A DNA stretch of 64,000 nt from the IMG/VR virus record IMGVR_UViG_3300007770_001284, positions 62,001 through 126,000 of that record. One strand, given 5' to 3'. Shown here in pieces: positions 26,129-56,104 of this stretch (position 1 is the first letter of the stretch; every line of letters starts with the position of its first letter). The notes beneath the pieces are model-generated. The model had not been told where the DNA came from. It did not search any database and saw nothing but the letters and a program-made list of their open reading frames with translations. Made by a program: the position numbers and the translations under genes.

Positions 26129-26129
26129 C

Positions 26130-31499: not shown

Positions 31500-31997
31500 A
31501 TGGCGTTAACGAAATTAGGAGATAGACAAGTTTACTCTTTTAGGTCTGTTGGTGAACAAGCCGAGGCCCGGAAGCTTCGACAGAAAGAGCAAAAAAGGAA
31601 TATAGCTTTTGGGATTAAAACCCCCGTGGCGCTGTCGTCGGAGGGAACTGAGTTTATTAAAATGAATTATTCTATGGCTGATCAAGTTAGCGATAATTTT
31701 AAGAACTTAATCCTCACAAATCACGGTGAACGGTTGGGGTTTCCTGATTTCGGTGCGAACTTAATGGAGTTGTCGTTTGAGCTTCAAAGCGAAGATGGGC
31801 AAACTGAGGCGATAAATAGGATAAGTCGCGCCGTCGGTAAATACATGCCCTATGTGATTCCATCCACATTCGAACCCATTACTGAGTATTTTGACAACAA
31901 GAACGTCGCAAAAGTCGGTGTTAGAATCACTTATAGTGTTCCGAAGTTAAACGTCCAGAACAGGATTCTTGAAGTAATAATCTATAGCGCGAGTTGA
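31500..31997 (+). CDS. Baseplate wedge/sheath initiator (T4 gp25 / P2 gpW-like)
   Basis: Q...N.KNLILTNHGER...PDFGANL....FE and I..AV.KYMPYV. Confidence 0.9.
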   Translation: MALTKLGDRQVYSFRSVGEQAEARKLRQKEQKRNIAFGIKTPVALSSEGTEFIKMNYSMADQVSDNFKNLILTNHGERLGFPDFGANLMELSFELQSEDGQTEAINRISRAVGKYMPYVIPSTFEPITEYFDNKNVAKVGVRITYSVPKLNVQNRILEVIIYSAS

Positions 31998-33851: not shown

Positions 33852-35405
33852 ATGTTTTATATCTTAACGGCTAGCGCTGATACATACATCACAAATAAAA
33901 TTATTGATAATAGTTTTAGAGCCACCGACACGAATGTTGGAAGGGCTGGTACACTGGATTTGTTTAAGCTCTACGATGAGTCTACGTATACTTCTGGGTC
34001 TACTAGGGTTACGTCATCTGTTAGTGAGCTGTCACGCTTATTAGTAAAATTCGATTACAGCACGCTATCCACACTCGCGAGTTCTTCTCTAGATTTTACG
34101 AACTCGAGCTTCAGAGCAACGCTTGAATTAACTGAGGTAGAAACAGGATCACCAGTTCCTAGAAATTTTTGGGTTGTTGCTTATCCACTGGCTAAAGCTT
34201 TTTCTGAAGGCTCTGGTCGTGATGTTAACCGCTTTCTAGATGTCGACGCCGCAAATTTTTTGACGGCATCCTATTCTTCTTCCGGCTCACCGGTATTATG
34301 GAGTCTGTCGGGCTCTGGTAAAGCTGGGTTTATGGGGGATTCGGGAATTGATTATATCACAACTGGCGTCCTGGGATCTTCCATAACTGACTTCGGAGCG
34401 TCTCAATATTTCAGTGATGGGCCTGGGAAAATATCACTTGACGTAACAAAGGTTGTTTCTTCATCATTGGCTGGTGATTTATCAAACCACGGCTTTAGAA
34501 TTTCTTTTAGCGGGTCATACGAAACAGATTCAAAAACAAGGTTCGCTAAAAGGTTCGCCTCTCGCCACGTTAGAAACAAAATATTGGCACCCCGAATTCT
34601 TGTAACATGGAATAATACCATAAAAGACAGTCATCAAAGCTTCATATTTAATTCTACTGCGAGCTTGTTCCTAAAAAATATTGTTGGGGGAACTGCAACT
34701 AACATTAGATCTGGTGCATCTGATACGGCACTGACAGGTCAGAATTGCATACTACTGACGTTGATCAGTGGGTCTGGACCAACTGCTAAATCAATTTTTG
34801 TAACAGGATCTCAACATACCGGGTCCGCAACTGGTGCGGGAATGACTGGAGTGTACTCTGCCTCATTTTCCCTTAACAGGTTTGATTCTACATTTTTTAA
34901 GACCTTGAGAAGTCAGGATGAGCTTGTCTTGAAAGAGATTTGGTCTTCTATCGATAGAACTATTGGATATCTGACAAGTTCTATTACAGTGAAGAAGTCC
35001 GCAGTCGGAACTGATAATTTTGTTAATAGAAGCTTGGTGTTCTCTGCGCTGAATGCGCAGCCAGAGTATAAGCAATACTCGACCGCGAAAATTCGTCTCT
35101 TTATAGAAGATATCGACGCGCAATTAAAAGACAAAGCTTACAAGCTACCACGAAAATTAAAGACAGCTGTGGTTGATAGAGTATATTATAGGATAAGAGA
35201 TATTGAAACGAATACGGTTATTATACCATTCGATGACGTAACGGATTCGACAAGGCTTTGTACTGATGCTGCTGGAATGTATATTGATTTATTAACTGCT
35301 GGTCTTCCATTAAATAGAAGCTATACTATAGACTTGCTTGTGAAGGATAGCGGGGTTTCGGAAATTGTGGAGCTTAGGGATATTTCTTTTAAGGTTGTTT
35401 CTTAA
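33852..35405 (+). CDS. Virion structural (baseplate-associated) protein
   Basis: Follows the gp6-like gene; SRLLVKFD, LDVT..V, N.GF, P.I.V.W and YYRIRD...VIIPFD; [ST]GS-rich. Confidence 0.6.
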   Translation: MFYILTASADTYITNKIIDNSFRATDTNVGRAGTLDLFKLYDESTYTSGSTRVTSSVSELSRLLVKFDYSTLSTLASSSLDFTNSSFRATLELTEVETGSPVPRNFWVVAYPLAKAFSEGSGRDVNRFLDVDAANFLTASYSSSGSPVLWSLSGSGKAGFMGDSGIDYITTGVLGSSITDFGASQYFSDGPGKISLDVTKVVSSSLAGDLSNHGFRISFSGSYETDSKTRFAKRFASRHVRNKILAPRILVTWNNTIKDSHQSFIFNSTASLFLKNIVGGTATNIRSGASDTALTGQNCILLTLISGSGPTAKSIFVTGSQHTGSATGAGMTGVYSASFSLNRFDSTFFKTLRSQDELVLKEIWSSIDRTIGYLTSSITVKKSAVGTDNFVNRSLVFSALNAQPEYKQYSTAKIRLFIEDIDAQLKDKAYKLPRKLKTAVVDRVYYRIRDIETNTVIIPFDDVTDSTRLCTDAAGMYIDLLTAGLPLNRSYTIDLLVKDSGVSEIVELRDISFKVVS

Positions 35406-38400
35406 TGGCTAAGGGACCCAAGATAAGGCGGGTTTTTGAAAACCAGCGACTTTTCACCCCGCAGGTGATCCGAAGGTATACAGACTCTTCGGGGGTGTTA
35501 AAGCACCAGAGCGCCGCCTCGCTTTCTGGATCTGCACCGTCCTCTACAACAGGTTCGTTTCGATATGACCCTCCGGGATCACCCCTTAAGTCATCTCAGC
35601 AGCTTCCATTAGATTTTTCAAAATTTGAAAACCATACATTTTTTGCTTCTGCTGAATCAAACGTTAATATCGCATTTGAGAAGATAATAAATCAATTTCC
35701 GTTCGACGGAACGCGTGAGGAGTATGAAGACTTCTTGGATGACCTGACAGGATTTGAGAAACATGTCTTAGATTCTTTCCCAAGCTATACTGGGTATCTC
35801 ACCTTCTCAAGTTCTTTAAAGCAATATATCGAAATAAAAGATAGAGCAGGTGTTCTTTTTCCAGCACTTTCTAGAATCCGCTCTGCAAAAACAATATTAG
35901 ATCCTTTAGATCGCTCTTTTTCGGTAGAGTGTCGTCTTTTTTTGCCTCCCATAGCGAATGATAATCAGATAATTTTTAGTCATATGAGTGATGGAGGGGT
36001 GGGCTATGCTGCCTTTCTAGATTCAGGCGATGCATCGGCTGCTAATATAAACTTTGCTGTCATTAGCGGGTCTGATCATATTTCTGCATCTTATTCTTTA
36101 CCAAAAGACCAATTTCATTTTCTAAATTTCGTTTATGACAAGAGGCCAGGCAAGAAATTTGCAGCTATAATGAGCAGTTCTGCGATAACAGCTAAGTCTC
36201 GACGCTTTAAGTTTGGATCGTTGTCTACCCGCGGAGCCTCTTTTTTTATAGCGACTGGTAGCACATTACAACTGGGAGGGTCAGAATTTATTCCAGCTGA
36301 AACATTTAGCGGATCCATTGACGAATTCAGAGTGTTTTCTGATGTACGTACTACGGAAGACATAGAGTATTACAACCAGCGAACGATGTTCGCGAAAGAC
36401 GGTCTTAGGCTGTCATTACGTTTTAATGAACCAACAGGATCGTATACGAACAACGATGTTGTTTTAGACCACTCTGGGATGAGCTTACATTCACGGATAA
36501 GCAATTTTGCCGCTTCGATGCGGACTGTTGATACTGATAACATTCCGCCAATGCTATTTGAGGCGTCTGTAAAGCATCCTGTGCTTTTTCCATCGTACCC
36601 CACCGTATTAACGCTCAACGAACAATTATTATTGACTGCCTCATCATACGATACAAACAATCCTAACTTAATTACAAAGTTGATTCCAGAACATTATTTG
36701 GCAGAGGCCGCGGCGACGCTTGATGTGTCGTCTGACCCTGATGGTTCGTTGATGGACGGCTTATCATCAACTACTTCCGTCGACTACAGCGCACCTGGCG
36801 GCGCGCAGTTGGGACAACCCCAGATTATTTCTTCGCTTCTTTTTGTGTGGGCAAGAGAGTTTGACTTGATCAAATCGATGCTTGATCATGCTAGTAATTT
36901 AGTGTTCGCAGAATATGATACAGAAGAATCAATTGCTGATCAATTTTTACCAGTTCTGGCGCATCATTATGGTATCGAGCTGCCAAATATGTTTAGAAAC
37001 GCAAAAATGAATCAATTTTTTGCTGGCGAAGAAATTGTTGATGGGAAGATAACAAAAAGTCTGCAGTTTGTTCAAAACGAGATTTGGCGACGTCTTTTAA
37101 CGAACATCCGCGAAATTATAATTTCGAAAGGTACAAAACATGCCATGAAGGCTGTCTTTAGGGCCTCTGGTATAGACCCCAATCGCATATTCAGATTTGT
37201 CGAATATGGTGGCACTTCGACACAACGCTTGGGTCTTGCAAGAGAAAAAGCAACAGAAGTGTCTACGTTACTAGATTTTTCTGGGAGTATGGCGAATATG
37301 ACGGGTGTTGAAGATGCGCATGGTTTTTATAGCGTGAAGCCAGCCGTGCAAAGCGTGTTTCTGTCTGCATCACGTGTTGAGAGGGGATACCCGAACATAT
37401 CAGGCGATTTTGTTGCACATCCCGACGGAGGTACATATTCAGACGCCGCCCGAGACGGCTTATTAACGTCAGGCAGCTGGACGATCGAAACTCGAGTGAA
37501 GTTTCCAATGGCGCGAGACATCACCTGGAACCAGAGCTTATTTCGCCTCCACGTAACTGCGTCAGAGGACGAGGGTAATCCCAGCGCTGCTGATAATTCT
37601 CACAGGGTATTACTGAACCTCGTTGCGACTCCGCCAATATCTCGTGCTGTATACGCCGAGAAAACAGGCGAGCAGCTCACATTGTATTGTCGACCAGGTT
37701 TCAATTCATCAGCACCTTTGCTTGCTCTTCCGTTAACCGGCGCCGATATTTTTGATGGCAAAACTTGGTATATTTCTTGTGGTCGAATTCGATCAGAGCA
37801 TGCTGGATCGTATGTGTCTTCGAGCTATTTTATAAGAGCTGGCCGCCAAGAGTATGGAGACGTTTCTGAGTATTATGTAACTTCTTCGCACTTTGCTGAA
37901 AACGATTATTCTGATCTTCCCGGTGAAAATTTATTTCAACGAAAAAATGCAGTGTCTGATCCGATCCTTAATGCTAGCGGCTCGTTTATAGTGGTTGGTA
38001 CTCAAAATATCCACACTGGCACCGGCTTTTACCAATTAAACGATAGTGCTATAAGCAACACTGCAAGAACAACTCGTTTTGACGGCCTTTGGGGGCATTG
38101 CAGGTTCTGGTCAAAAGCGCTCGATGAAGATGAATCGAAAGAACATATTTTAAATTTCAAGTCGCTTGGCGTGAAGGACCCGCTTGTTAACTTTGGCTTT
38201 TCGTCAGATGTAACGGGTTCATTTGAGAAGCTTCGTATTGATGTTTCGACAGATCAGCCTAGCACAGAAAGCAATGAATTGGGTACTTTACCGCTGGTTG
38301 ATTTTTCGCAAAACTTCAATCCTGTTTCCGCCGGTGGCAATGCTAGCGGCGCAACGGCATTTGGATTTGAAGCCAAAAAACGTATTATACAGCCCGAGCG

Positions 38401-38980
38401 TTTTGATTTTAGCTTTTTATCCCCAAATTACGATGAGATGCCAGAACAGAATAAGGTTCGAGTGGCCGGGTTCACTCAAGGAAAAAATCTTTTTGAGCTG
38501 GGCGGTAATCCAGCCCCAGTTTATGAGATCGTTAAATCCGCTGAACCAGTTGATGACACCCGGTTTATGATTGAATTTTCTATAATGCAAGCCCTTGACG
38601 AAGACATAATGAACATCTATGCGACTCTCGACGCACTTGATCTCGCGTTAGGCGCCCCAGAGCTGATGTTTGCAGAAGAGTATCCAGATCTTGCTAGATT
38701 AAGAAAAATATATTTTAATCGCTTAACAGAGTCCATTAATTACAAAAAGCTGTTTGATTTCTTTAGATGGCTTGATGATTCATTTGATGTGATTATTGAG
38801 AGCCTTATTCCTCGAAAGACAAATTATCTGGGGTTCAATTTTATAATTGAGGGCCATGGCCTCGAGCGACCGAAGGTCGCGTATGGTTCTGGTGATGTAT
38901 ATCTCGGCGAGAGTACTCGTAGAAATCTTAAGGGGATAATACTACTCCGACAACTTGTTGGTGATATGAGGAAGTACTGA
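35405..38980 (+). CDS. Large baseplate wedge protein (gp7/P2 gpI-like segment) with LamG-like domains
   Basis: FSGSIDEFRVF (LamG), ADQFLPVLAHHYG...IWRRLL.N...I..SKGT (gpI-like) and a second LamG-like domain. Confidence 0.65.
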   Translation: MAKGPKIRRVFENQRLFTPQVIRRYTDSSGVLKHQSAASLSGSAPSSTTGSFRYDPPGSPLKSSQQLPLDFSKFENHTFFASAESNVNIAFEKIINQFPFDGTREEYEDFLDDLTGFEKHVLDSFPSYTGYLTFSSSLKQYIEIKDRAGVLFPALSRIRSAKTILDPLDRSFSVECRLFLPPIANDNQIIFSHMSDGGVGYAAFLDSGDASAANINFAVISGSDHISASYSLPKDQFHFLNFVYDKRPGKKFAAIMSSSAITAKSRRFKFGSLSTRGASFFIATGSTLQLGGSEFIPAETFSGSIDEFRVFSDVRTTEDIEYYNQRTMFAKDGLRLSLRFNEPTGSYTNNDVVLDHSGMSLHSRISNFAASMRTVDTDNIPPMLFEASVKHPVLFPSYPTVLTLNEQLLLTASSYDTNNPNLITKLIPEHYLAEAAATLDVSSDPDGSLMDGLSSTTSVDYSAPGGAQLGQPQIISSLLFVWAREFDLIKSMLDHASNLVFAEYDTEESIADQFLPVLAHHYGIELPNMFRNAKMNQFFAGEEIVDGKITKSLQFVQNEIWRRLLTNIREIIISKGTKHAMKAVFRASGIDPNRIFRFVEYGGTSTQRLGLAREKATEVSTLLDFSGSMANMTGVEDAHGFYSVKPAVQSVFLSASRVERGYPNISGDFVAHPDGGTYSDAARDGLLTSGSWTIETRVKFPMARDITWNQSLFRLHVTASEDEGNPSAADNSHRVLLNLVATPPISRAVYAEKTGEQLTLYCRPGFNSSAPLLALPLTGADIFDGKTWYISCGRIRSEHAGSYVSSSYFIRAGRQEYGDVSEYYVTSSHFAENDYSDLPGENLFQRKNAVSDPILNASGSFIVVGTQNIHTGTGFYQLNDSAISNTARTTRFDGLWGHCRFWSKALDEDESKEHILNFKSLGVKDPLVNFGFSSDVTGSFEKLRIDVSTDQPSTESNELGTLPLVDFSQNFNPVSAGGNASGATAFGFEAKKRIIQPERFDFSFLSPNYDEMPEQNKVRVAGFTQGKNLFELGGNPAPVYEIVKSAEPVDDTRFMIEFSIMQALDEDIMNIYATLDALDLALGAPELMFAEEYPDLARLRKIYFNRLTESINYKKLFDFFRWLDDSFDVIIESLIPRKTNYLGFNFIIEGHGLERPKVAYGSGDVYLGESTRRNLKGIILLRQLVGDMRKY

Positions 38981-41646
38981 TGCCAAAATATGTCATAACG
39001 ACGCCAGTCAATAATACTGCATATTATAATCTTACTGCATCGATGTACGTTGGTGGTCCACCTCCAGTTGCACAATATACTGCGCATAGTTCATTAGCTG
39101 GATGGTGGCGGTTAAATGAAGACGTTTCCGCTGCTGGTTCTATTACTGATGCAAGCGGAATGGGACTCCCCGGCTCGTTTGCAGCTCTCACCGAACGACC
39201 GAGCTTTTCGATATCAACACCGTCATCGAATATCCAAATGAGGACATGTTTATTTGACGGATCTTCTGACGTCGTCACAGTTGCGGTACCCGCTGATGCA
39301 ACTGCGCTTTCGTTCGGTGACGGCGCTACCGACACACCATTTTCTGTAAGCGCTTGGGTTTACCGTACTGGAACCGGATCTCTGACATATGACACTATAA
39401 TCCACAAAGGTGAGCAGAGTGGTGTTAATTTGGAGTACCAGCTGGTCTTGTATGATGCCAATGGCGACGGAAATTCTAGAATACGATTTAAGGTTGGTGA
39501 TGATAGCGTAAATGCAAACCTGCTAGCACAAACTCCAGCTGCTTCATTAACAGGAGGTAGCTGGCACCATATAGTCGCGACATATGACGGGACCGGGGCA
39601 GAGACAATCGCTGCAGGCGGCGATGCGACGGGCTGCATGTCAATTTATATTGATGGCGTCGCGCAATCCCTGTCTGATGATTCTACTCTTGCTTCATCTT
39701 ATGTTGCGATGGAGAATTCCGCCGAGTCTCTTTATGTGGGTGCGAGACAAACTGTAAATTATTACAACGGAAATATGGCCGATGTTGCGATCTGGGGAGT
39801 TGTATTATCTGAAGCTGATGTGACAGCGCTATATAACGCCACCGGTGGCTCCTTTTATTATACGTATCGAAATTATGACCTCATCGGCTATGGCGAAAGG
39901 CTATCTCCTACCGGTTCGCAGTACGAGATGTCCCTGCAGGGCCTTGACGCACAGAAAGATGGCATCTACTACCCAAGCCTCCTTCCAAGGATCAGACAGG
40001 GCGCTCCAATGTCGTTATGGCGAAATGGAGACAAGCTCCCTGACACGTATTTTGACGATACGCTACAAATGAATCCAGACCCAAATGATATGCGCGGCGA
40101 AAATGATGTGAAAATAAATCAACGTATTGATTTTGATATGGAGAAATTAGATTTCGGACAGGCACCGACCGTCCAGCAGGGCATGCCCTATGTCGAGACG
40201 CAACGCTACGATCCAGTTGCCTATTTGCAAGCATCGGAAGAGACGATGTGGCCTGTGCATCTTTTTAATCTTGGTTCATTGCTCGATCACGAATTTGATG
40301 GTATCATTGAGCCGCTAGATGTTAGACCAGAAATACTGGGCATGTCCGACCATCGTTATGAGGGCCACGCCGTGAGAGGTGGCTTGACGGGGGGCGCTGC
40401 TGAGACATACTTCGGAAGTAAGCAGATCGTTGATACGTGGAAGACCTCAGATACAAAAGTTGCCCATTTTTTAGATGCTCCGCTAAATTGGGGGACGATA
40501 CCCGTAGGAGCGTACTCAAATATCACTCAGGAATCTGACACTGCTTTTTTTGACACGACAGCATTTGATGCCACAAACGGTGTATTATTTTTGAACAATC
40601 AATTAATGAGCAGTGGGATGTCAGCACCTTACGATCTTGTCGATACAGATGCAATATTCTCTATGGACCTCGCAAACTCGGACTTCCACGCCATGAGATA
40701 TCGTTTTCCGGCTTCCAATAGGCTTGCTCTTTGGTTTAGGTTCAATGAAGACAACTCATACGCTACCGATCCCTCCGGCGACGTGGTGGACAGTAGCGGA
40801 AATGGTAGAGATGGTTCCATGCAAAACTCGTATGACCACCCGGTCTTCTTTGAGTGGCAAGACCCTGATGGTCCTTCGTCATCCACCTCTTCTCCATCAG
40901 CATTGATCCAGACAGGAAGCGCTGGATTTGCGTGGGGGGGGGACGATCCTTGTCGTGTAATTTCCTCTAACGCCGCTGACTGGGAGGCCACATCTTGGGG
41001 AAGTGGCGGTGGATATTGTTCTATATCGGTTTGGGTCTGGTGGGATGCTCCTACCTCACGAGTGATAAACACGGGAGTGAACGAAGAGTCGTCTATTGTT
41101 ACAATCGGAAACGGTAATGTTAGGCTCTATATTGACGATACCACTGGCTATCTAACATTTAAGAGAATTTACACAAGCCAGGTTGGTAAGTGGGAATCGA
41201 GAAATCCAGTCCCCGAGAAAGAATGGGTCCACCTCGCGATTACGTACTTAACTTCCGACTACCCGTTCTTGTTTGACCCGACGATGTATATCAATGGTAG
41301 AATTGTTCCTATTACAGAAGACACGCCCGGCAATGGAACTCCAGACGCCATCAACTCCTACGGGCTTATTGTGAGTACATCCGGCACTCGTGTGAAGACA
41401 TTCTCGGGTATCATATCGGATCTTGCTGTGTGGAGTCATCATGACTTAAAGCCGAGCGAGGTACGTGCGATATACAACGCACGTTTCGGCACGTACGAGG
41501 ACTCTTTAGCTGAAGATAATTTAATAGCGGCGATGCGTTTGATGAACACAGGATCTCAAGCTACCGCCGACCCGACAGAAGAGCGGGCAAATCATGGATT
41601 TTACTTTGACAAAAATGCTGGTTCAATTACGTACGGAGACTTGTAA
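38980..41646 (+). CDS. Virion protein with two LamG/concanavalin A-like domains
   Basis: GWWRLNE, FSVSAWV, WHHIVATYDG, IYIDG and YNGNMADVAIW; second copy WVHLAITY, MYING and FSGIISDLAVW. Confidence 0.75.
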   Translation: MPKYVITTPVNNTAYYNLTASMYVGGPPPVAQYTAHSSLAGWWRLNEDVSAAGSITDASGMGLPGSFAALTERPSFSISTPSSNIQMRTCLFDGSSDVVTVAVPADATALSFGDGATDTPFSVSAWVYRTGTGSLTYDTIIHKGEQSGVNLEYQLVLYDANGDGNSRIRFKVGDDSVNANLLAQTPAASLTGGSWHHIVATYDGTGAETIAAGGDATGCMSIYIDGVAQSLSDDSTLASSYVAMENSAESLYVGARQTVNYYNGNMADVAIWGVVLSEADVTALYNATGGSFYYTYRNYDLIGYGERLSPTGSQYEMSLQGLDAQKDGIYYPSLLPRIRQGAPMSLWRNGDKLPDTYFDDTLQMNPDPNDMRGENDVKINQRIDFDMEKLDFGQAPTVQQGMPYVETQRYDPVAYLQASEETMWPVHLFNLGSLLDHEFDGIIEPLDVRPEILGMSDHRYEGHAVRGGLTGGAAETYFGSKQIVDTWKTSDTKVAHFLDAPLNWGTIPVGAYSNITQESDTAFFDTTAFDATNGVLFLNNQLMSSGMSAPYDLVDTDAIFSMDLANSDFHAMRYRFPASNRLALWFRFNEDNSYATDPSGDVVDSSGNGRDGSMQNSYDHPVFFEWQDPDGPSSSTSSPSALIQTGSAGFAWGGDDPCRVISSNAADWEATSWGSGGGYCSISVWVWWDAPTSRVINTGVNEESSIVTIGNGNVRLYIDDTTGYLTFKRIYTSQVGKWESRNPVPEKEWVHLAITYLTSDYPFLFDPTMYINGRIVPITEDTPGNGTPDAINSYGLIVSTSGTRVKTFSGIISDLAVWSHHDLKPSEVRAIYNARFGTYEDSLAEDNLIAAMRLMNTGSQATADPTEERANHGFYFDKNAGSITYGDL

Positions 41647-48842: not shown

Positions 48843-48868
48843 TACCGGCTACCACGTTGCTTTTCGTA

Positions 48869-48875
48869 ATATTTA
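48869..48875 (+). promoter_or_regulatory. Candidate late promoter ATATTTA
   Basis: Member of the ATANTTA set; ends 23 nt before ATG 48899. Confidence 0.5.
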
Positions 48876-48898
48876 GTGTTACGTAACGGGAATGTTGA

Positions 48899-51800
48899 AT
48901 GGCACGTGAATCAAGGACATCTTTAAATAAATCTGATTTTTTGGTCATAAGATCGAAAACTGACGATTCTATCTTAAAGATAGTTTCTCCCCAGCACTTC
49001 CAGATCGGGTTCGATGATAAGGAATTTCATCGGATTCTCGCTGTCCATGGTAATGTTGAGGCCACAACGGTGTACGCTCCATCATTGTCTGGTTCTTTAA
49101 CACGCCTTGCTGATGGTACTACGTATCTACGCGAAGGGAACAATGTAACGATTACAACTGGTTCAGACGGCGCTGTTACGATTGCCGCGGGTACAGGCGC
49201 GCTGGTCGGGACGCTGTCGGGAGTAGAGGCGGACGGAATTCAAGACTTTACTTATGACGGAAGCGGAAACGCATCAGTAAAGGTAGACTTATATGACCGC
49301 GGAGGAATTACATTCTCTTCAAGTGGTCTGGGTCTGAATCCAAATGATGTAGACTCAGAATTAGCTGTGACCCCCGCCTCCGGAGACTTGCTGTTCATCT
49401 ACGATCTTGATGACCCCACTGCACGCAATGTAAAAAAGGTTTCCGTCTCCAACTTAATGGCGGCAGGCGCCGGTGGCACTTTGGCGAATGCCATTACTTT
49501 TGGAGACGGAATTTATGATTCTGCTTCTGGCGCAAGCTCATATAATAATACTGCCGCGGCAACAATCGCAGTAGATCTTGCGACAAATTCTGGTTTAGAA
49601 TTTAGTTCAAATAAATTAAAAGCCGATCTGGATGGCTCAACGTTAAGTGTAAATTCGTCTGGACTAAGCGTTGCGTCAGTACCGAATGCTTTAACACATG
49701 GAACGGGAATATCATCATTTAGTTATGACGGCGGCACAGCTAGCGTGGCAGTCGGTATCGATACATCTACGGTTCCTCTTTTGGCAAGTAGCAATACATG
49801 GTCTGGAACAAATACATTTGGTACACTGTTGGGGAAGCATGATGAGGTGTCTTCTGGCGTTCCATATCTTGTGGGCGGTAGCAACGTTACAATTTCTTAT
49901 GATACCCCGACTTCTGGCCAGATAACAATCGCTGCTTCGCTTGGTGCCGGAGGAGATCTTACCGCCGGGTCAGGTATTGGCACTTTTACGTATAATGGCA
50001 CAGGTGCAGCAACAGTTGGATTAGACGCAACATCGTTGTCTTCTGCTGGTACAAGGTCTTCATCTCTATTTGTGTCTGACGGCGGGACTACAATAACAAA
50101 ATCTACTGTGGGTACGTTGGTTGACCTGGTTGACAGAACCGTGCTGATGGCCGCGGCTTCGAACGGCGGGATCAACCTGAACTTTCAAGGTGCTGAGCTA
50201 CCAACTTTATTTTCTATTGATTTAGATGGCAGTACCCTTTCGATCGGAAATAACGGGATATCTGTTGCAAATTTGCCGTATGCAATTTCTCAAGGAACAG
50301 GCATTGATACATTTTCGTTTGACGGCTCTTCTACCCAGACAGTTGCAATCGACACTGCAGTGGTTCCTCGAAAGGGTGTCGACAATACGTGGACAGGGAA
50401 AAATACGTTTGGTATATCAACAACAGCGGGCTTAACTGGCTCTCTACAAGAAGTGTCTTCTGGTGTACCATATCTTGCCTGCGGTACAGGTGTAAGCATC
50501 GTTACGTCATCGAACGGACAGATAGTCGTTTCAACAGATGGCACAGAAATTACTGGTGTTACCGCTGGCCAGGGATTGACAGGTGGCGGTGCTTCCGGCG
50601 ATGTAACCCTGGCGGTTGATCTTGCATCAACCGCAGGCCTAGAATTTAGCTCTGATAAATTAAGGGTCAAGCTTGACGGCAGCACAATCGATATGGGTTC
50701 TTCTGGTATAAGCGTGGCGAATGTTCCAAATTCTTTGGCTCAAGGAACAGGGATATCAACGTTCACTTATGATGGTGGGACTTCTGGTATTACTGTTGGT
50801 ATTGATAATTCTGTCGTCGCGACATTAACTGGGTCTCAATTTAGCGGACCTGTTGTCTTTAATGCTGGTTTGTCTGGGTCGTTGACGCGGCTTCCTGATG
50901 GTACGTCATATCTCCGGCAGGGTGATAACGTCACGATAACGACGGGGTCTTCTGGTGAGATTACAATTAGCGCAATCGCTGGTGGTGGTGGCGTCGCGGA
51001 TGGTAATGCACAATATCTTGTTTTGGCCGCGACTAGTTCTCTCGCGCAAGAGAGAGTTATTACAATGGGGACAGGCCTTGCATCTAGCGACGACGGTGCA
51101 GGTAATGCGTACACTCTACGAGTGAAAGATAGCGAGTTTGCTGCATTAACTGGCTCGATTTTTTCCGGTGATGTTGTTGCGCAAGCAGGACTTTCCGGGT
51201 CCTTACAAGCGCTGTCTGATGGCACGTCATACCTCCGCGAGGGCTCGAATATTGCAATAGCAAGTTCCTCAGCGGGATATGTCACAGTGTCTTCTACTGA
51301 TACAACATACACAGCTGGTTCCGGCCTGGATCTTTCGGGTACCGCATTTAGTGTCGATCTTAAGAGCGGATCTGGCTTAGTAATTGACTCTGCCGAGCTT
51401 TCAATTGATGATTCTGTTTTAGCGACGATTACTGGGTCTACTTTTACTGGTACCGTGACCGCCCCAGCTCTTTCGGGTTCGCTTACAAGACTACAAGACG
51501 GGACTTCCTATCTACGACCAGGTAATGCTAATGTTATCATAACCTCTGCCTCAGCTGGGTATATTTCAATATCATCTACTGACACAGACACAACATACAC
51601 TGCTGGCGATGGTCTAGATCTTTCAGGCACCGAATTCAGTGTCGATCTTAAGAGCAACTCTGGGTTGGTGATTGATTCAACAGAGCTCTCTATAGACGAT
51701 TCGATTATTGCAACGATCACTGGATCGACCTTCACAGGCACGGTTACTGCTCCAGCTCTTTCTGGTTCACTCACCAAACTACAAGATGGGACATCTTACC

Positions 51801-53737
51801 TGATCGCAGGAAGTAACGTGACCATTACTACTGGCTCCTCTGGAGCTGTGACAGTAGCTGCGTCCGGTGGAGAAATATCAGTTGTTTCCGGTTCTTCTAG
51901 CGTTTCAAGCATCAGCACTCTAAACTTATCTAAGCTTGGAGTTATAAGCGATCTGGGCGGTGGCGTCGTCGCAGTCACTGGGTCTATAGGAGATGCTGAA
52001 GACGGTTCATATTCTGATGGGTTATTCACCGATTTCAGTACTGTAACACCAGTTGGGACAGCGGTGGATAGGTTTAACGAGGTCTTGAAGGGGCTTGCAC
52101 CCTCCGCCGCCCCAGGTCTAGACGATATGAACTGTTCAGACTCTGGTACTTCGGCTGTCCTTTCCTTCGGATCATCGCAGTCAATTTCCGGTTATACAAA
52201 TGCACGACCTTCCACGTTGACGCCCACTGACAATCTTTCTGATATCGATATTAATGGAACGTTTAATTCAACTGCCGCAAGTAATGACTTACGGCGCGCT
52301 TGTTTCGGCGGCTCGACAGTGATCAACGGAACGCTGAACGCCGACGTGTCAGCAGATGGTGTAAATTACGCCGCTTATTCATTCGGCAACGGTAATCAGG
52401 GAACTTTGAAACTTTTTGTAAATGATAATTCCACTGCAATACACTCTGTAGATTTAAGTTCATTCGGGTCTGGGAATTCTTTGAACGGAAACGGGTCTGG
52501 GTTTAACCTTTCTGCAACCACGCCAGGCCATTTTAGCGATAGCAGCAATTTCGAAACTTTCCAACACCGGCAAGGTACATACACAATCACCGCCGCTGAT
52601 CAGCAGAGCGGGTGGAACTACGCGAGGGTGGTGCACACAATAGCAGGCGCAGATATAACATGCAACTATGTGGAGTGGGTGAACGATCCCGATTCCAATG
52701 CATTGTCTTCCGATAATTCTGCCATGGATTCGCTTTCCATGACAGGAACTAAAAATCTTTCGGGAGTGAAATATAACACTGGCGGAACCGCTGAATATAG
52801 GATCCGCGTCTTGAATGCGTATCGTAATGTATATTCTACATCTACAATATCTTTTAACGGCACAAATTGCTCAGTCTCGTCTCAAGCGTTTCCATCTATC
52901 AATCATGCAGGCGGCGAAGATGAAACGAAAATTCTGCATCTTACTGGATCAGCGACGATTACAGGCGATCCTATTTTAGATGGGTCGATTTCTGTAAGTA
53001 CTAATGTACCCGCACCGCTAAAATCGAATCTTTCCAGCGCCGGCTCACAGTCAATAAGCGGAATTTTGTTATACGATCTATCTGATACATCCACCGCCAC
53101 GTCTGAGACGTTCAGGGGTGAAAGTTATAGATTAATATCAGGTAGCTATAATACTCAAGCTAACGTTACCGCTGGAGGGAGTGCTTGGGATTCTACAACA
53201 AGCCTCGCCGGCGTTGATGGCTTGCTTTTTTATAATAGCCGACTTTACGCGCCGCCCCAAGGAGGAGATTCTGGAGATTTTAGAAACACTTCTGACGGCG
53301 GGTCAATAACAAACGGTCCAAGTAGCAATGTAAATTATAGCGGTATCACGTCAGGCACAAGAACGTTTTATAGATATTTTCAGAACACATCAGGGGGCTC
53401 AAAGACAGGTTTCGATCTTACTATCAACGGATCAGGAACTATCGCTTCTCAAGCGACTACATTGACAACGTCGAACCTTCACGTGTTGATTAAGCTTCCG
53501 ACCACAACTGCTGCCTTTGAAACTGGGTGGATGGATTTGGCAATCTCATTCGCGACGGGACAAACCTCCGACGGCGACGGCTGCTTAGATGGAAGCTTAG
53601 ACTCATCGCTCAATGCGACTAACACTGCGACCTTCGGAACACAGTCAGTAGGCAGTAATGAATATATAGTTGTGAAAATAGAGGCAGACGCTTCATCAAC
53701 TGGGTACATTTCTAGTATGAGCGTTTCGTGGAGCTAA
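48899..53737 (+). CDS. Repeat-rich fibre-like virion protein (1612 aa)
   Basis: Ser/Gly/Thr-rich, with 7 copies (2 degenerate) of LSGSLxxLxDGTSYLxxGxNVTI plus other repeats, and a unique ~600-aa C-terminus. Confidence 0.7.
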   Translation: MARESRTSLNKSDFLVIRSKTDDSILKIVSPQHFQIGFDDKEFHRILAVHGNVEATTVYAPSLSGSLTRLADGTTYLREGNNVTITTGSDGAVTIAAGTGALVGTLSGVEADGIQDFTYDGSGNASVKVDLYDRGGITFSSSGLGLNPNDVDSELAVTPASGDLLFIYDLDDPTARNVKKVSVSNLMAAGAGGTLANAITFGDGIYDSASGASSYNNTAAATIAVDLATNSGLEFSSNKLKADLDGSTLSVNSSGLSVASVPNALTHGTGISSFSYDGGTASVAVGIDTSTVPLLASSNTWSGTNTFGTLLGKHDEVSSGVPYLVGGSNVTISYDTPTSGQITIAASLGAGGDLTAGSGIGTFTYNGTGAATVGLDATSLSSAGTRSSSLFVSDGGTTITKSTVGTLVDLVDRTVLMAAASNGGINLNFQGAELPTLFSIDLDGSTLSIGNNGISVANLPYAISQGTGIDTFSFDGSSTQTVAIDTAVVPRKGVDNTWTGKNTFGISTTAGLTGSLQEVSSGVPYLACGTGVSIVTSSNGQIVVSTDGTEITGVTAGQGLTGGGASGDVTLAVDLASTAGLEFSSDKLRVKLDGSTIDMGSSGISVANVPNSLAQGTGISTFTYDGGTSGITVGIDNSVVATLTGSQFSGPVVFNAGLSGSLTRLPDGTSYLRQGDNVTITTGSSGEITISAIAGGGGVADGNAQYLVLAATSSLAQERVITMGTGLASSDDGAGNAYTLRVKDSEFAALTGSIFSGDVVAQAGLSGSLQALSDGTSYLREGSNIAIASSSAGYVTVSSTDTTYTAGSGLDLSGTAFSVDLKSGSGLVIDSAELSIDDSVLATITGSTFTGTVTAPALSGSLTRLQDGTSYLRPGNANVIITSASAGYISISSTDTDTTYTAGDGLDLSGTEFSVDLKSNSGLVIDSTELSIDDSIIATITGSTFTGTVTAPALSGSLTKLQDGTSYLIAGSNVTITTGSSGAVTVAASGGEISVVSGSSSVSSISTLNLSKLGVISDLGGGVVAVTGSIGDAEDGSYSDGLFTDFSTVTPVGTAVDRFNEVLKGLAPSAAPGLDDMNCSDSGTSAVLSFGSSQSISGYTNARPSTLTPTDNLSDIDINGTFNSTAASNDLRRACFGGSTVINGTLNADVSADGVNYAAYSFGNGNQGTLKLFVNDNSTAIHSVDLSSFGSGNSLNGNGSGFNLSATTPGHFSDSSNFETFQHRQGTYTITAADQQSGWNYARVVHTIAGADITCNYVEWVNDPDSNALSSDNSAMDSLSMTGTKNLSGVKYNTGGTAEYRIRVLNAYRNVYSTSTISFNGTNCSVSSQAFPSINHAGGEDETKILHLTGSATITGDPILDGSISVSTNVPAPLKSNLSSAGSQSISGILLYDLSDTSTATSETFRGESYRLISGSYNTQANVTAGGSAWDSTTSLAGVDGLLFYNSRLYAPPQGGDSGDFRNTSDGGSITNGPSSNVNYSGITSGTRTFYRYFQNTSGGSKTGFDLTINGSGTIASQATTLTTSNLHVLIKLPTTTAAFETGWMDLAISFATGQTSDGDGCLDGSLDSSLNATNTATFGTQSVGSNEYIVVKIEADASSTGYISSMSVSWS
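51293..51800 (+). repeat. Tandem intragenic duplication, 288-bp period
   Basis: gtgtcgatcttaagagc at 51351 and 51639; the peptide TYTAGxGLDLSGTxFSVDLKS...DGTSYL occurs twice. Confidence 0.85.
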
Positions 53738-53740
53738 CCT

Positions 53741-56104
53741 ATGGCGTATGATGCAAAAACTGAGCGCTTGATTTCGCTTAAGAAATTAGCGGGTAAAGCG
53801 CAGACATCAAACGATAAGGGTCTTTCTAACGAGGGACTGCCGTCAGGTATAACTACAACTTCTGAAAATATATTCGGAGAATCGGTCACTACCAGCCCAT
53901 CCAACACCGCGCTATATACAATCACGGGACAGGTGGAATACCTCAGATTTCCCGCAACGTTTATTGCCGGTAGCGATACATCGGATGGTCGACACGGATT
54001 TGAATTAAAGCTTCCATCTGATTATGAATCCAATTCATCGAATTCAAAGGCGGGTACGTACCCGTTCCAGAATGATCAAGTCATTAATATAACGTCTGGA
54101 TCGTTACAACTTATACCTCCATCTTTTGCGTCATCATACGAGGCAAAGCCGTATTACGGTGGTAATTCGTCCAAGGGATCAGGTACACTAATTCCGCTAC
54201 TGGACGCTCGAGATTGGTATCTAGATTATTTTAACGGAGTGTTCTTCCAGCAGGACCCATCTGGAACTGGAGACCAGGCGGATAATCCTGACTTTATTGA
54301 GGGCTATCTGTATATTGGTGATATGCTGGACACTGTTGTCGCGTCAGCTGGCGGTGCAGGAGATGGTGATCCTGCTGCACAATATCTTGTTTTGGCCGCC
54401 ACCGCATCGCTATCGAATGAGCGTGTGTTTACAGCAGGAACAGGAATAAAGACTACTGATTCTGGTGCCGGTGCTGCCTATACGATCGCAGTTAGAGATT
54501 CAATTGTCGCAACTTTAACTGGTTCAACATTTTCAGGAACAGTTTCTGCTCCCGCATTGTCCGGTTCATTAACGAATCTGCAGGATGGTACTAGCTACTT
54601 GATTGCTGGAAGTAATACGACAATAGTGACAGGTTCTTCAGGAGCCATTACAATTTCATCGACTGGAGGTATTGATGGTTCTGGAGCAGCAAACAGAATT
54701 GCGACCTGGTCAGATTCAGATACGCTAACATCTGATGCTGACTTTACGTGGAACGGGTCTCTTTTAGATGTCCAGGGTGACGTAAATCTTAACGGAACTG
54801 TGGTGGTAAACCAGAGCGGAGTCGATAAAAACTTTAGGGTAGAAACCCAAAATAAAAGTAGCGCCTTGCAGGTAGACGGTGAAACAGACCAAGTACTTCT
54901 ATTTTCCGGAAGTCTTTCTGATGCTTCTGGTCACGGCTCGTCAGCAGCAGACCCTGACCCAAGAACGTTCACTGACACTAATTTCTTCGTGTCTGGATCT
55001 ATCGATTCTCGAAATACTTCAAGGAGAGGTACTTCTGTTTTCGGTGGTGATGTTGTAGTATCCGGAACGTTATCTGTCAACAGGGGTCAGGCGGGTGTTG
55101 GTAGCATGTTTACCGTTACATCAGATGGTAAAGTTGGCATTGGGTCTGATACTCCTTCTTATAAGCTTTCTGTTGGCGGAAATATGGACGTGGGAGAGTA
55201 CATCTACCACAAAAATGATGCCAACACTTTTATTCGGTTTCAGCCAGATGATATAAACATTCAAGCTGGTGGTGTCGATCTTATAAAAATGACAGAATCA
55301 GGTGCCAATACACAGATACTGATTTTATCTGGTGGCGGCACCTCAGATCCCAACCCCGCTAATTTTGGTGATACTAGTTTCTTTGTATCTGGAAGTATAG
55401 GGAGTATTGGGACATCAACAGGGGGTTCATCTGTTTTCGGTGGGGATGTACTTGCTTCTGGGTCTGTTGTAGCGTTGGCCGGCCTATCCGCGTCTTTACA
55501 ACAACTTAGCGATGGTACATCATATCTTCGGGAAGGGCCGAACGTTACTATAACATCAGCCTCTGATGGTTCAATAACTATTTCTTCGACAGGAGGCAGC
55601 GGTTCTCCCGGCGGAAGCAATACGCAGATTCAATTTAACGATAGTAACACTTTTGGTGGCGACAGCACATTCACGTTTAATAAGGTAACGAATACTTTAA
55701 GCGTGCCCGCATTGTCGGGTTCATTGACGCGGCTCGTTGACGGTACGTCGTATCTTCGGTCTGGTACTGGTATCTCTATAACCACCGGATCATCTGGTTA
55801 TGTTCAAGTTAGTAATACTGGGGTATCCGAAAGACAGAGACAGAGCTATTTTCTAGCACAATCGTATTCTGCCGGGGTGAATGTTCCAGTGTCATCGACA
55901 AATTTTGCGACGGTATCTTATGACATTGGTTTGATCGACGTTTTATTGAATGGACAGTTATTGCATTCTGGCACAGCAGCGCAGGTAACAGCAGATCCTG
56001 TGGAACGAGATTACTATGTGACTGGTGCATCATCATTAAAATTTGCGTTTGATATTGAAATTGATGATGTTCTCGATGTAATGGTATACAAGGTAGTAAG
56101 CTAG
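53741..56104 (+). CDS. Fibre-like virion protein (787 aa) sharing repeats with the 48899 protein
   Basis: Three DGTSYL repeats, two FFVSGSI...SVFGGDV repeats, GKVGIG and a C-terminal LNGQLL domain. Confidence 0.7.
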   Translation: MAYDAKTERLISLKKLAGKAQTSNDKGLSNEGLPSGITTTSENIFGESVTTSPSNTALYTITGQVEYLRFPATFIAGSDTSDGRHGFELKLPSDYESNSSNSKAGTYPFQNDQVINITSGSLQLIPPSFASSYEAKPYYGGNSSKGSGTLIPLLDARDWYLDYFNGVFFQQDPSGTGDQADNPDFIEGYLYIGDMLDTVVASAGGAGDGDPAAQYLVLAATASLSNERVFTAGTGIKTTDSGAGAAYTIAVRDSIVATLTGSTFSGTVSAPALSGSLTNLQDGTSYLIAGSNTTIVTGSSGAITISSTGGIDGSGAANRIATWSDSDTLTSDADFTWNGSLLDVQGDVNLNGTVVVNQSGVDKNFRVETQNKSSALQVDGETDQVLLFSGSLSDASGHGSSAADPDPRTFTDTNFFVSGSIDSRNTSRRGTSVFGGDVVVSGTLSVNRGQAGVGSMFTVTSDGKVGIGSDTPSYKLSVGGNMDVGEYIYHKNDANTFIRFQPDDINIQAGGVDLIKMTESGANTQILILSGGGTSDPNPANFGDTSFFVSGSIGSIGTSTGGSSVFGGDVLASGSVVALAGLSASLQQLSDGTSYLREGPNVTITSASDGSITISSTGGSGSPGGSNTQIQFNDSNTFGGDSTFTFNKVTNTLSVPALSGSLTRLVDGTSYLRSGTGISITTGSSGYVQVSNTGVSERQRQSYFLAQSYSAGVNVPVSSTNFATVSYDIGLIDVLLNGQLLHSGTAAQVTADPVERDYYVTGASSLKFAFDIEIDDVLDVMVYKVVS

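What the first reader, a model, noticed from the sequence alone, without database searches (positions are those of the whole stretch)
33852..56104. [S/T]-G-S tripeptide enriched in a subset of structural proteins: possible new O-glycosylation sequon
Manual counts of SGS/TGS: 8 in the 517-aa 33852 protein, about 10 in the 1191-aa 35405 protein and about 11 in the 787-aa 53741 protein, with many more in the 1612-aa protein. They are often preceded by a hydrophobic residue (LSGS, FSGS, ISGS, VTGS), and SAS/TAS variants fill the same repeat positions (LSGSL vs LSASL; TTGSSG vs TSASDG). Controls: I found none in the 616-aa gp6-like protein and none in the 918-aa fibre at 56477, which is also S/T/G-rich. 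The motif occurs in non-homologous folds, so repeat expansion alone does not explain it. Inference: it is an acceptor site for the phage GTs, distinct from the Bacteroidetes D-[S/T]-[AILVMT] sequon.
Basis: partly seen in the sequence, partly recalled or inferred. Interest (0 to 1): 0.85.

Follow-up and report, generated by a model that had tools for sequence, protein, structure and literature searches.

The report
Clade-specific Ser-Gly-Ser motif in phage tails
A short motif (hydrophobic-Ser/Thr-Gly-Ser-hydrophobic) is truly and strongly over-represented in the outer baseplate and fibre proteins of this jumbo phage and its distant relatives, all of which carry at least the first gene of a conserved glycosyltransferase pair, but sequence alone cannot say whether it is a sugar-attachment site or only a structural turn.

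Summary
The counts are exact (8, 10, 4, 12, 18 and 11 [ST]GS in the six proteins from 33852 to 56104). The excess is real: 63 observed against about 21-23 expected, under both global and 10-100-residue local shuffles. It survives dipeptide correction (39.5 expected, p = 3e-4) and collapse of repeats (46 independent contexts against 20.4). It is a protein-level signal, because the codons are diverse. The full motif is hydrophobic-[S/T]-[G/A]-S-hydrophobic (22 against 1.7), with Ser and not Thr at the third position.

The trait is clade-wide. It appears in all metagenomic relatives and in Microcystis phage Mel-JY01, Flavobacterium phage immuto and Rhodothermus phage RM378. T4, ValKK3, P-TIM68 and ACG-2014e lack it. 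Pelagiphage HTVC008M has a weak, repeat-driven excess.

Enriched lineages carry a conserved GT4-A homologue, and the three with the firmest signal also carry GT4-B. A variable sugar-gene island lies beside the pair in all three; in this window it spans about 24 kb and includes two sulfotransferases.

No tool could test glycosylation. About half of the modelled sites sit at β-strand ends or tight turns, but their contexts are heterogeneous. I rate a structural strand-edge motif at about 0.45, an O-glycosylation acceptor at about 0.3 and other recognition at about 0.12. Three relatives are cultured, so glycoproteomics can decide.

The parts
33852..35405 (+). 517-aa multi-beta-sandwich baseplate-peripheral protein with 8 [ST]GS sites (residues 48, 98, 144, 153, 220, 306, 318, 323).
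   Evidence: ORF. Counts are 8 against 1.2 expected, p<0.0005. AF2 model has pLDDT 80.8. Foldseek matches Ig-, macroglobulin- and CBM-like sandwiches. In 52 homologues, 5 hot columns and 26 columns in all carry a site.
35405..38980 (+). 1191-aa baseplate protein with a Laminin_G_3 domain (residues 169-320) and 10 [ST]GS sites.
   Evidence: Pfam PF13385 at 40.6 bits. Counts are 10 against 1.4. In 35 homologues the motif keeps S/T at 0.90, a small residue at 0.94 and S/T at 0.89; S221, G222, G345, S346 and S691 are invariant. AF2 model has pLDDT 71.
38980..41646 (+). 888-aa protein with two Laminin_G_3 stretches and 4 sites; not significant on its own.
   Evidence: Pfam at 90.1 bits. Counts are 4 against 1.4, p about 0.05-0.08.
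41646..48842 (+). 2398-aa giant tail protein with 12 sites.
   Evidence: 12 against 4.5, p = 0.0015. Phi[ST]GSPhi is 4 against 0.33. Spacing is not periodic.
48899..53737 (+). 1612-aa fibre with repeat units of the type ATL-TGS-xFSGxV..L-SGS-LTRLxDGT..NVTIT-TGS-SG, and 18 sites.
   Evidence: 18 against 8.5. Sequence shown. Homologous to 53741. Spacings of 14-15 and 23 residues recur.
53741..56104 (+). 787-aa fibre, a paralogue of 48899, with 11 sites. LSASL and TSASDG variants occupy the same repeat positions.
   Evidence: 11 against 3.4. Sequence shown. BLAST to 48899 gives E = 2e-37.
56477..59233 (+). 918-aa fibre of a different type with no [ST]GS. It shares modules with pelagiphage tail proteins.
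   Evidence: 0 against 1.7 expected, not significant. 51-64% identity to modules of HTVC008M and HTVC033P.
24875..26128 (+). GT4-A, a glycosyltransferase of the Glycos_transf_1 family with an E-x7-E motif. It is conserved in Mel-JY01, immuto, LR756508 and RM378.
   Evidence: Pfam at 50 bits and phrog_2170. tblastn hits. Best PDB match is the virus-encoded GT B736L, 3oy2, E = 6e-6. Motif visible.
26106..27290 (+). GT4-B, a second and divergent GT4 with E-x7-D. Among cultured phages it is detectable only in immuto and Mel-JY01.
   Evidence: Pfam PF00534 at 35 bits and PF20706 at 29.6 bits. tblastn. 2580 metagenomic homologues. A profile search finds only generic GT4 structures.
23939..24811 (+). 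PD-(D/E)XK nuclease that always precedes the GT4 pair (conserved synteny).
   Evidence: Pfam at 72 bits. Synteny seen in L119, L120 and L125.
39..23897 (+). Glycan and nucleotide-sugar island. It encodes GT7C-like, GT11 and GT2 transferases, an aminotransferase, a UDP-Glc/GDP-Man dehydrogenase, two sulfotransferases, an SDR, a Zn-ADH, a split transketolase, a PfkB kinase, a cytidylyltransferase, a cupin, three epimerase/dehydratases, an NTP-transferase, a HAD phosphatase and a GDP-mannose 4,6-dehydratase.
   Evidence: Pfam scans.
31500..33844 (+). gp25-like (31500) and gp6-like (31994) baseplate wedge genes. They anchor the module and have no [ST]GS.
   Evidence: PHROG hits. 57 related loci. 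About 30% identity to Mel-JY01, immuto and LR756508.

Best explanation
The motif hydrophobic-[S/T]-[G/A]-S-hydrophobic is a strand-edge or tight-connection element of the beta-rich outer baseplate and fibre proteins of one deep myovirus clade. That clade comprises this jumbo-phage family, Mel-JY01, immuto and RM378.

Proposed mechanism (inferred): the two hydrophobic residues sit in the cores of adjacent beta-strands. The three small residues between them make the turn, bulge or strand cap, and the hydroxyls cap backbone groups.

Origin (inferred): the motif is old in the conserved baseplate proteins. Examples are the LamG-type positions such as FSGSIDEFR and SGSWTIE in the 1191-aa protein. 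It has been multiplied by domain and repeat duplication in the fibres.

What is shown: the enrichment, its specificity, its conservation and its secondary-structure positions. What is inferred: that the reason is structural rather than a modification.
For: - Flanks: hydrophobic residues at -1 and +3 occur far above background, and the 5-mer is 10-25 times over expectation in four lineages.
- Structure: in the two AF2 models about half of 18 sites lie at or next to a beta-strand terminus. Examples are S221 ending a strand with G222-S223 as the turn, SGS just before W692 opening a strand, and sites 48 and 306 of the 517-aa protein.
- Substitutions: G to A or S, and sometimes S to A, which looks like a size constraint.
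- Conservation: position is strongly conserved in the 1191-aa family, with the motif Ser at 0.84 identity against 0.47 for all Ser.
- Periodicity: spacing is periodic in the fibre proteins.
- Independence from GT4: HTVC008M, with no GT4 homologue, still has a weak repeat-borne excess. RM378 has the excess without a detectable GT4-B.
Against: - The structural contexts are heterogeneous: hairpin, strand start, in-strand, long loop and a disordered N-terminus. G345-S346 are invariant inside a low-confidence loop.
- Thr is not enriched at the third position, although I would expect it to serve as well as Ser in a tight turn.
- Beta-rich fibres and giant baseplate proteins of T4, ValKK3, P-TIM68 and ACG-2014e show no excess (34 against 32).
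- Lineage-specific proteins with no detectable cross-lineage homologue are enriched too (151 against 40).
- The globular proteins show no periodicity.
- At aligned motif positions, LR756508's homologue of the 1191-aa protein has other residues, so the fold seems to tolerate loss. That alignment is weak, at 21% identity.
Confidence: 0.45

Rival explanations
1. The motif is the acceptor site of a cytoplasmic O-glycosylation system. The conserved GT4-A/GT4-B pair would transfer a sugar to Ser or Thr at exposed strand-loop junctions of outer baseplate and fibre proteins. The variable neighbouring sugar genes would supply or extend a lineage-specific glycan, which here could include deoxyhexose and sulfate.
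For: - Clade-specific co-occurrence: the window family always has both GT4 genes once at least 6.6 kb of upstream flank is held. Mel-JY01 and immuto have both and show strong excess.
- LR756508 has GT4-A only and a weak excess (6 against 2.5). T4-type controls have neither.
- The PD-(D/E)XK, GT4-A, GT4-B synteny is followed by different sugar genes in each lineage, which suggests a diversifying glycan.
- A 24-kb glycan island abuts the baseplate module.
- The excess is confined to outer tail proteins and is absent from terminase, putative portal, capsid, tube and two non-fibre giants in Mel-JY01.
- Ser specificity at +2, heterogeneous folds and invariant motif residues in flexible loops fit recognition better than fold constraint.
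[quoted passage not shown] Phage-encoded virion glycosylation is known in mycobacteriophages (cited in PMC12619734).
Against: - There is no direct evidence of any glycan.
- All positive lineages form one clade, so the association amounts to a single evolutionary event.
- HTVC008M shows a 1.5-2.1-fold excess without a GT4 homologue.
- RM378 lacks a detectable GT4-B.
- Mel-JY01's GT4-A is split by a frame change, yet its excess is the strongest.
- Both GT4 proteins match only generic GT4 enzymes and resemble no known protein O-GT.
- The pair sits beside replication genes in Mel-JY01 and immuto, which is compatible with DNA or host-envelope targets.
- Hydrophobic flanks imply partly buried surroundings.
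Confidence: 0.3
2. The motif is read by some other trans-acting factor of the clade. Candidates are a different modification of Ser (phosphorylation, acylation), or a clade-specific assembly chaperone or interface rule used repeatedly when the outer baseplate and fibres assemble.
For: The same arguments for recognition apply. The motif is clade-specific, sequence-specific (Ser, not Thr) and present in non-homologous proteins and in flexible, invariant loops. Low-confidence loops in monomer models are often subunit interfaces, which is my inference.
Against: No candidate kinase, acyltransferase or chaperone gene was identified in the window. Ten to 26 copies per protein is unusual for a chaperone signal.
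Confidence: 0.12
3. The excess is a statistical or compositional artefact. Possible sources are S/G/T-rich patches, repeat copies, or a DNA-level word.
For: The proteins are rich in S, T and G. 17 of the 63 sites collapse into repeated contexts. The SG and GS dipeptides are each about 1.4 times enriched.
Against: The excess survives 10-residue block shuffles (z = 8.4), Markov-1 correction (p = 3e-4) and repeat collapse (2.3 times). The codons are diverse. The signal replicates in three independent cultured genomes and in dozens of metagenomic relatives, and fails to appear in equally S/T/G-rich controls.
Confidence: 0.03

Closest known systems
Aah/TibC autotransporter O-heptosyltransferases (BAHT) and their strand-loop-strand acceptor
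   Same: They carry out cytoplasmic, multi-site O-glycosylation of beta-rich surface proteins. Recognition is of a short strand-loop-strand with the acceptor at the loop start (PMC3835316). Several motif sites here have that geometry.
   Different: No BAHT-type enzyme was found among the ORFs scanned with Pfam. The candidate enzymes here are GT4. Aah has no sequence consensus, whereas this motif is sequence-specific. Nothing is shown experimentally.
Phage-encoded virion glycosylation in mycobacteriophages (Freeman et al. 2023, as cited in PMC12619734)
   Same: Phage-borne GT genes modify the phage's own structural proteins.
   Different: There the glycans sit on C-termini of capsid and tail-tube subunits. 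Here the candidate sites are internal motifs in outer baseplate and fibre proteins of an unrelated myovirus clade. I could not read that paper.
GtfA/GtfB two-protein O-GlcNAc transferase of serine-rich repeat adhesins (recalled from general knowledge)
   Same: Two adjacent GT-B/GT4-type genes, and Ser acceptors flanked by small residues (S-A-S or S-V-S type repeats).
   Different: No GtfA or GtfB structure appears among the PDB matches, and no DUF1975-type partner domain was found. The substrates here are folded beta-proteins, not long disordered Ser-rich repeats.
Tight beta-hairpin or ST-turn motifs with Gly followed by Ser (general structural knowledge)
   Same: A small hydroxylated residue, Gly, then Ser between two strands, as at S221-G222-S223 of the 1191-aa protein.
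   Different: Such turns would accept Thr or Asn as well and occur in all beta-proteins. Here Thr and Asn variants are not enriched, and T4-type fibres lack the excess.
Bacteroidetes general O-glycosylation sequon D-[S/T]-[A/I/L/V/M/T]
   Same: A three-residue motif with a hydroxyl acceptor. Some hosts of the clade are Bacteroidota.
   Different: It is not enriched in any of the four lineages (ratios 0.76-0.87). As I recall, that system acts outside the cytoplasm.
Virus-encoded glycosylation machinery of giant viruses
   Same: A large virus-encoded sugar-nucleotide and GT gene set lies beside structural genes. The best solved match of GT4-A is the virus-encoded GT B736L (3oy2), which I recall to be of chlorovirus origin.
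   Different: The match is weak (E = 6e-6). The viruses and hosts are different, and the acceptor motifs are unrelated.

Membership tests
GT4 / Glycos_transf_1 glycosyltransferases (GT4-A 24875, GT4-B 26106) | Pfam PF00534 match above the gathering score | tested here: met
   50.0 and 35.0 bits against a cut-off of 26.4. PHROG glycosyltransferase phrog_2170.
GT4 / Glycos_transf_1 glycosyltransferases (GT4-A 24875, GT4-B 26106) | E-x7-E motif in the C-terminal Rossmann domain | tested here: inconclusive
   GT4-A has E-x7-E (EGFGLSTLE). GT4-B has E-x7-D (EGWGLPILD), as seen in the pairwise alignment. The first Glu is invariant in 19 GT4-B homologues.
Experimentally defined protein O-glycosylation sequon | Glycan mass found on the Ser/Thr of the motif | not testable with these tools
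   Needs glycoproteomics of virions.
Experimentally defined protein O-glycosylation sequon | Sites are solvent-exposed on the folded protein | tested here: inconclusive
   Only secondary structure and pLDDT were returned, with no coordinates. Sites are at strand ends, turns and loops, but two lie inside strands and the flanks are hydrophobic.
Experimentally defined protein O-glycosylation sequon | Motif presence tracks presence of the transferase across independent lineages | tested here: inconclusive
   The two track within one clade and both are absent in four controls. The clade counts as a single event, and HTVC008M and RM378 are partial exceptions.
GtfA/GtfB-type serine-rich-repeat glycosylation | Sequence similarity of the pair to GtfA/GtfB, or a DUF1975-type partner | tested here: not met
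   No such Pfam domain. No GtfA or GtfB chains among the PDB matches.
BAHT (Aah/TibC) O-heptosylation | BAHT-family transferase encoded nearby | tested here: not met
   None among the 45 window ORFs scanned with Pfam.
BAHT (Aah/TibC) O-heptosylation | [quoted passage not shown] | tested here: inconclusive
   This geometry is seen at sites 48 and 306, and site 220 starts just after a strand end (517-aa protein), and at site 221 (1191-aa protein; site 626 follows a strand end). It is not seen at the other sites.
Bacteroidetes D-[ST]-[AILVMT] sequon | Enrichment of that tripeptide in the same proteins | tested here: not met
   35 against 40.1 in the window. Ratios are 0.76-0.87 in all four lineages.
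Laminin_G_3 / concanavalin-A-like domain | Pfam PF13385 match above the gathering score | tested here: met
   The 1191-aa protein scores 40.6 bits and the 888-aa protein 90.1 bits, against a cut-off of 27.6. The 2398-aa protein is below threshold.
Tight two-residue beta-hairpin (Gly at i+1, Ser at i+2) | Motif Gly-Ser forms a two-residue connection between two strands | tested here: inconclusive
   Clear at 221-223 of the 1191-aa protein and at 48-50 of the 517-aa protein (306-308 leads through a short helical turn to the next strand). Other sites are strand starts, long loops, in-strand or disordered.

The most novel reading that the evidence does not exclude
Hydrophobic-[S/T]-[G/A]-S-hydrophobic is the acceptor motif of a previously unrecognised phage protein O-glycosylation system. 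A conserved GT4-A/GT4-B pair, with hypervariable sugar islands beside it (here able to make deoxyhexose and sulfated sugars), would coat the outer baseplate and fibres of a widespread clade of aquatic large myoviruses with lineage-specific glycans.
Probability: 0.3. Interest if true: 0.85.

Novelty: new variant of a known kind. Interest (0 to 1): 0.6.

Why it matters
If the motif is a glycan acceptor, it would be the first sequence-defined sequon for phage self-glycosylation that I know of. It would explain why a widespread clade of aquatic large phages keeps a GT4 pair as a core gene set next to fast-changing sugar islands. It would also imply that receptor-binding organelles of phages can be glycan-coated, with consequences for host recognition, stability and particle stickiness in the sea.

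If the motif is only structural, it is still a sharp sequence signature. It marks the outer tail proteins of this clade and may help annotate otherwise unrecognisable giant ORFs.

The question is directly testable, because immuto, Mel-JY01 and RM378 are cultured.

Tried and rejected
- DNA-level cause: rejected, because the sites use many different codon triplets.
- Local S/G/T-rich patches: rejected by block shuffles of 10-100 residues.
- Dipeptide bias alone: rejected (63 against 39.5).
- Repeat expansion alone: rejected (46 independent contexts against 20.4). The globular proteins have no self-similarity by BLAST and no periodic spacing.
- A general property of phage fibres: rejected by T4, ValKK3, P-TIM68 and ACG-2014e.
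- Bacteroidetes sequon and N-x-S/T: not enriched.
- Stop read-through between 48899 and 53741: the two ORFs are in frame, but the junction is an ordinary TAA plus one codon, and the window has no tRNA genes.

Dead ends:
- blastn of the baseplate region against phages found nothing.
- tblastn of the 888-aa LamG protein found nothing.
- PHROGs gave nothing for any of the six proteins.
- Foldseek gave only generic beta-sandwich matches.
- TJE1, with a weak GT homologue, was uninformative.
- The Freeman 2023 paper is not held.
- The Kuenenia S-layer paper reports no motif.
- There is no literature on Mel-JY01, on sulfotransferases in jumbo phages, or on glycosylated phage tail fibres.
- Model coordinates are not exposed, so solvent accessibility could not be computed.

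Full report
**What is in the window.** All long ORFs lie on the + strand.
- Bases 39-23897 encode a dense glycan and nucleotide-sugar island. It contains GT7C-like, GT11 and GT2 transferases, an aminotransferase, a UDP-glucose/GDP-mannose dehydrogenase and two Sulfotransfer_2 proteins. It also has an SDR, a Zn-dehydrogenase, a split transketolase, a PfkB kinase, a cytidylyltransferase and a cupin. Three epimerase/dehydratases, an NTP-transferase, a HAD phosphatase and a GDP-mannose 4,6-dehydratase complete the set.
- Next come a PD-(D/E)XK nuclease (23939) and two GT4 glycosyltransferases (24875 and 26106).
- The baseplate module follows: a gp25-like gene (31500), a gp6-like gene (31994) and the six large proteins of the finding.
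- Pfam finds only Laminin_G_3 domains, in the 1191-aa and 888-aa proteins. PHROGs finds nothing for the six.

- The six proteins carry 63 [ST]GS against 20-23.5 expected. This is true whether residues are shuffled across each protein or within blocks of 10 to 100 residues (z = 8.4-9.7).
- Among all tripeptides, SGS ranks first and TGS sixth.
- SG, TG, GS and GT dipeptides are each about 1.4 times enriched. Given those, 39.5 [ST]GS are expected and 63 are seen (p = 3e-4). SGT, TGT, SGG, SGN and NGS show no such excess.
- The sites use many different codon triplets, so the signal is at the protein level.
- Hydrophobic residues flank the motif. The five-residue form Phi-[ST]-G-S-Phi occurs 22 times against 1.7 expected.
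- The other 44 ORFs of the window together show 13 against 8.3 expected.

- The two 'controls' had expectations of only 0.29 and 1.7, so their zeros carry little weight.
- SAS/TAS are not enriched overall in this window (21 against 15), although they do replace SGS/TGS at equivalent repeat positions.
- The fibres 48899 and 53741 are paralogues built of one repeat unit that carries three motif positions. Collapsing similar contexts leaves 46 independent sites against 20.4 expected, still 2.3 times.
- 56477 is a different kind of fibre. It shares modules with pelagiphage tail proteins at 51-64% identity.

**The trait is clade-wide.**
- The gp6-like and 517-aa proteins retrieved 114 related loci from viral metagenomes, with contigs up to 293 kb.
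- Every relative shows about a five-fold excess in homologues of the first four proteins. Every locus holding at least 6.6 kb of upstream flank has both GT4 genes.
- The nearest cultured relatives have about 30% gp6 identity. Both have the excess: Microcystis phage Mel-JY01 (45 against 6.1 downstream of gp6) and Flavobacterium phage immuto (53 against 11.8).
- Rhodothermus phage RM378 has it too (41 against 14.6 over all ORFs of 300 aa or more). There it is concentrated in a block of large unannotated ORFs, probably tail genes.
- The five-residue motif gives 14 against 1.0 in Mel-JY01, 27 against 1.1 in immuto and 9 against 0.9 in RM378.
- [ST]-A-S is also enriched in immuto, and TAS in RM378. 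[ST]-G-T is not clearly enriched in any lineage.
- In Mel-JY01 the excess is confined to fibre-like virion proteins, with a mild signal in the sheath. Terminase, putative portal, capsid, tube and two giants of 1348 and 2255 aa have none.

**Controls.**
- Outer baseplate and fibre proteins show no excess in four T4-type phages: T4 (7 against 8.3), Vibrio phage ValKK3 (3 against 3.9), Prochlorococcus phage P-TIM68 (12 against 11.2) and Synechococcus phage ACG-2014e (12 against 8.9). Several of these proteins are just as rich in S, T and G.
- Pelagiphage HTVC008M has a weak excess (37 against 17.9). It comes largely from a few repeated modules and falls to 1.5 times after collapse.
- After the same collapse, Mel-JY01 is at 6.1 times, RM378 at 4.2, immuto at 3.1 and the window at 2.3.

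**Link to the glycosyltransferases.**
- GT4-A has homologues in Mel-JY01, immuto, the 484-kb phage LR756508 and RM378.
- Among cultured phages, GT4-B is detectable only in immuto and Mel-JY01.
- The order PD-(D/E)XK, GT4-A, GT4-B is conserved in the window, Mel-JY01 and immuto. In each it lies beside a different set of sugar-modifying genes.
- LR756508 has the nuclease and GT4-A but no GT4-B. Its excess is weak (6 against 2.5), even though it has homologous baseplate genes.
- RM378 has no detectable GT4-B. Mel-JY01's GT4-A is split by a frame change. HTVC008M has no homologue of either.
- Both GT4 proteins match only generic GT4 enzymes. The best solved match of GT4-A is the virus-encoded GT B736L, at E = 6e-6.
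- The literature I could search offers DNA modification or host-surface remodelling as the usual roles of phage GTs. It has no report of glycosylated tail proteins or of this motif.

**Conservation.**
- In 52 homologues of the 517-aa protein, 26 alignment columns carry a site in at least one sequence. Five are 'hot' (at least half of the sequences), and the number per protein stays at 4-9. So there is both conservation and turnover.
- In 35 homologues of the 1191-aa protein the motif is far more conserved than ordinary residues. S/T is kept at 0.90, a small residue at 0.94 and S/T at 0.89, against a mean identity of 0.47 for all Ser and 0.35 for all Thr. Several motif residues are invariant, and position +3 is usually aromatic.
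- Across lineages, the excess is present in segments with cross-lineage BLAST homology (48 against 6.1). It is also present in segments without any (151 against 40).

**Structure.**
- The 517-aa protein models as a chain of beta-sandwich domains (pLDDT 80.8). The 1191-aa protein models at pLDDT 71.
- Of the 18 sites, about half lie at or next to a strand terminus. Examples are S221 ending a strand with G222-S223 as a two-residue turn, and SGS directly before W692 opening a strand.
- Two sites lie inside strands. The rest are in longer loops or low-confidence regions, including the invariant G345-S346.
- Spacing between sites is periodic only in the fibre-repeat proteins.

**Verdict.** The enrichment is real, specific, conserved and clade-restricted. 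Why it exists is not settled.
- I give a structural strand-edge motif 0.45. The evidence is the hydrophobic flanks, small-residue substitutions, strand-end positions, strong positional conservation and partial independence from the GT4 genes.
- I give an O-glycosylation acceptor 0.30. The evidence is the co-occurrence with a core GT4 pair and variable sugar islands, Ser specificity, heterogeneous folds, restriction to outer tail proteins and the precedent of Aah-type strand-loop-strand recognition.
- I give another kind of recognition 0.12 and an artefact 0.03. The rest is unassigned.
- Virion glycoproteomics on the cultured relatives would decide.

Noticed in passing
window 39-23897: A glycan-biosynthesis island of about 24 kb sits in a phage genome. 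It includes two Sulfotransfer_2 proteins (9421, 10821), a GT11 fucosyltransferase-type gene (650), two GT7C-like genes (39, 1435), a UDP-Glc/GDP-Man dehydrogenase (7306) and a GDP-mannose 4,6-dehydratase (22833). My literature search found no paper combining jumbo phages, sulfotransferases and glycosyltransferases.
   Followed up: partly
window 12384-20703: This stretch holds a split transketolase (15653 N-terminal part, 16390 pyrimidine-binding part), a PfkB kinase (16887) and a cytidylyltransferase-like gene (12384). It also has a cupin (12800), epimerases (17621, 19067), an NTP-transferase (19990) and a HAD phosphatase (20615). The set is reminiscent of a heptose or branched-sugar nucleotide pathway. 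No SIS-type isomerase was found.
   Followed up: partly
window 23939-27290; L119 9935-14862; L120 10801-14720: The gene order PD-(D/E)XK nuclease, GT4-A, GT4-B is conserved between the window, Mel-JY01 and immuto at about 25-30% identity. A different set of sugar genes lies next to it in each.
   Followed up: yes
L119 12001-13492 (Mel-JY01): GT4-A of Mel-JY01 is annotated as two CDS in different frames, split between the two Rossmann halves. This is either a real split or frameshift, or a sequencing error.
   Followed up: no
window 56477-59233: The SGS-free 918-aa fibre shares modules of about 100 residues at 51-64% identity with tail proteins of Pelagibacter phages HTVC008M and HTVC033P. This suggests horizontal exchange of fibre modules and may hint at the host.
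   Followed up: partly
window 1-64000: G+C rises from about 0.39-0.42 in the glycan island to 0.48-0.535 in the giant tail genes (40-48 kb). GC skew falls to near zero there.
   Followed up: no
window 53735-53743: The 1612-aa and 787-aa paralogous fibre genes are in the same reading frame. They are separated only by TAA and one codon. The window has no tRNA gene, so there is no sign of read-through.
   Followed up: yes
window 33852-56104: DGS is also over-represented (18 against 6.5) and SGG is depleted (5 against 10.3). NG and GN dipeptides are slightly under-represented (0.88).
   Followed up: no
L124, L125 (LR756508): The 484-kb uncultured phage has gp6-like and 1191-aa-like homologues and GT4-A, but no detectable GT4-B and only a weak motif excess. 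It is the one informative partial exception inside the wider clade.
   Followed up: partly
L132 (HTVC008M) 13241-21473: The tail proteins of pelagiphage HTVC008M carry five copies of a module x[ST]GS[LIV]VFEG. The homologous module of window protein 56477 reads VDVLVFEG, without the motif.
   Followed up: partly
whole window and PMC12619734: The recently named 'moraphages' are aquatic jumbo phages of up to 307 kb with predicted Bacteroidota hosts and four GT orthogroups in the core genome. They may be the same lineage as this window or overlap it. I could not verify that.
   Followed up: no
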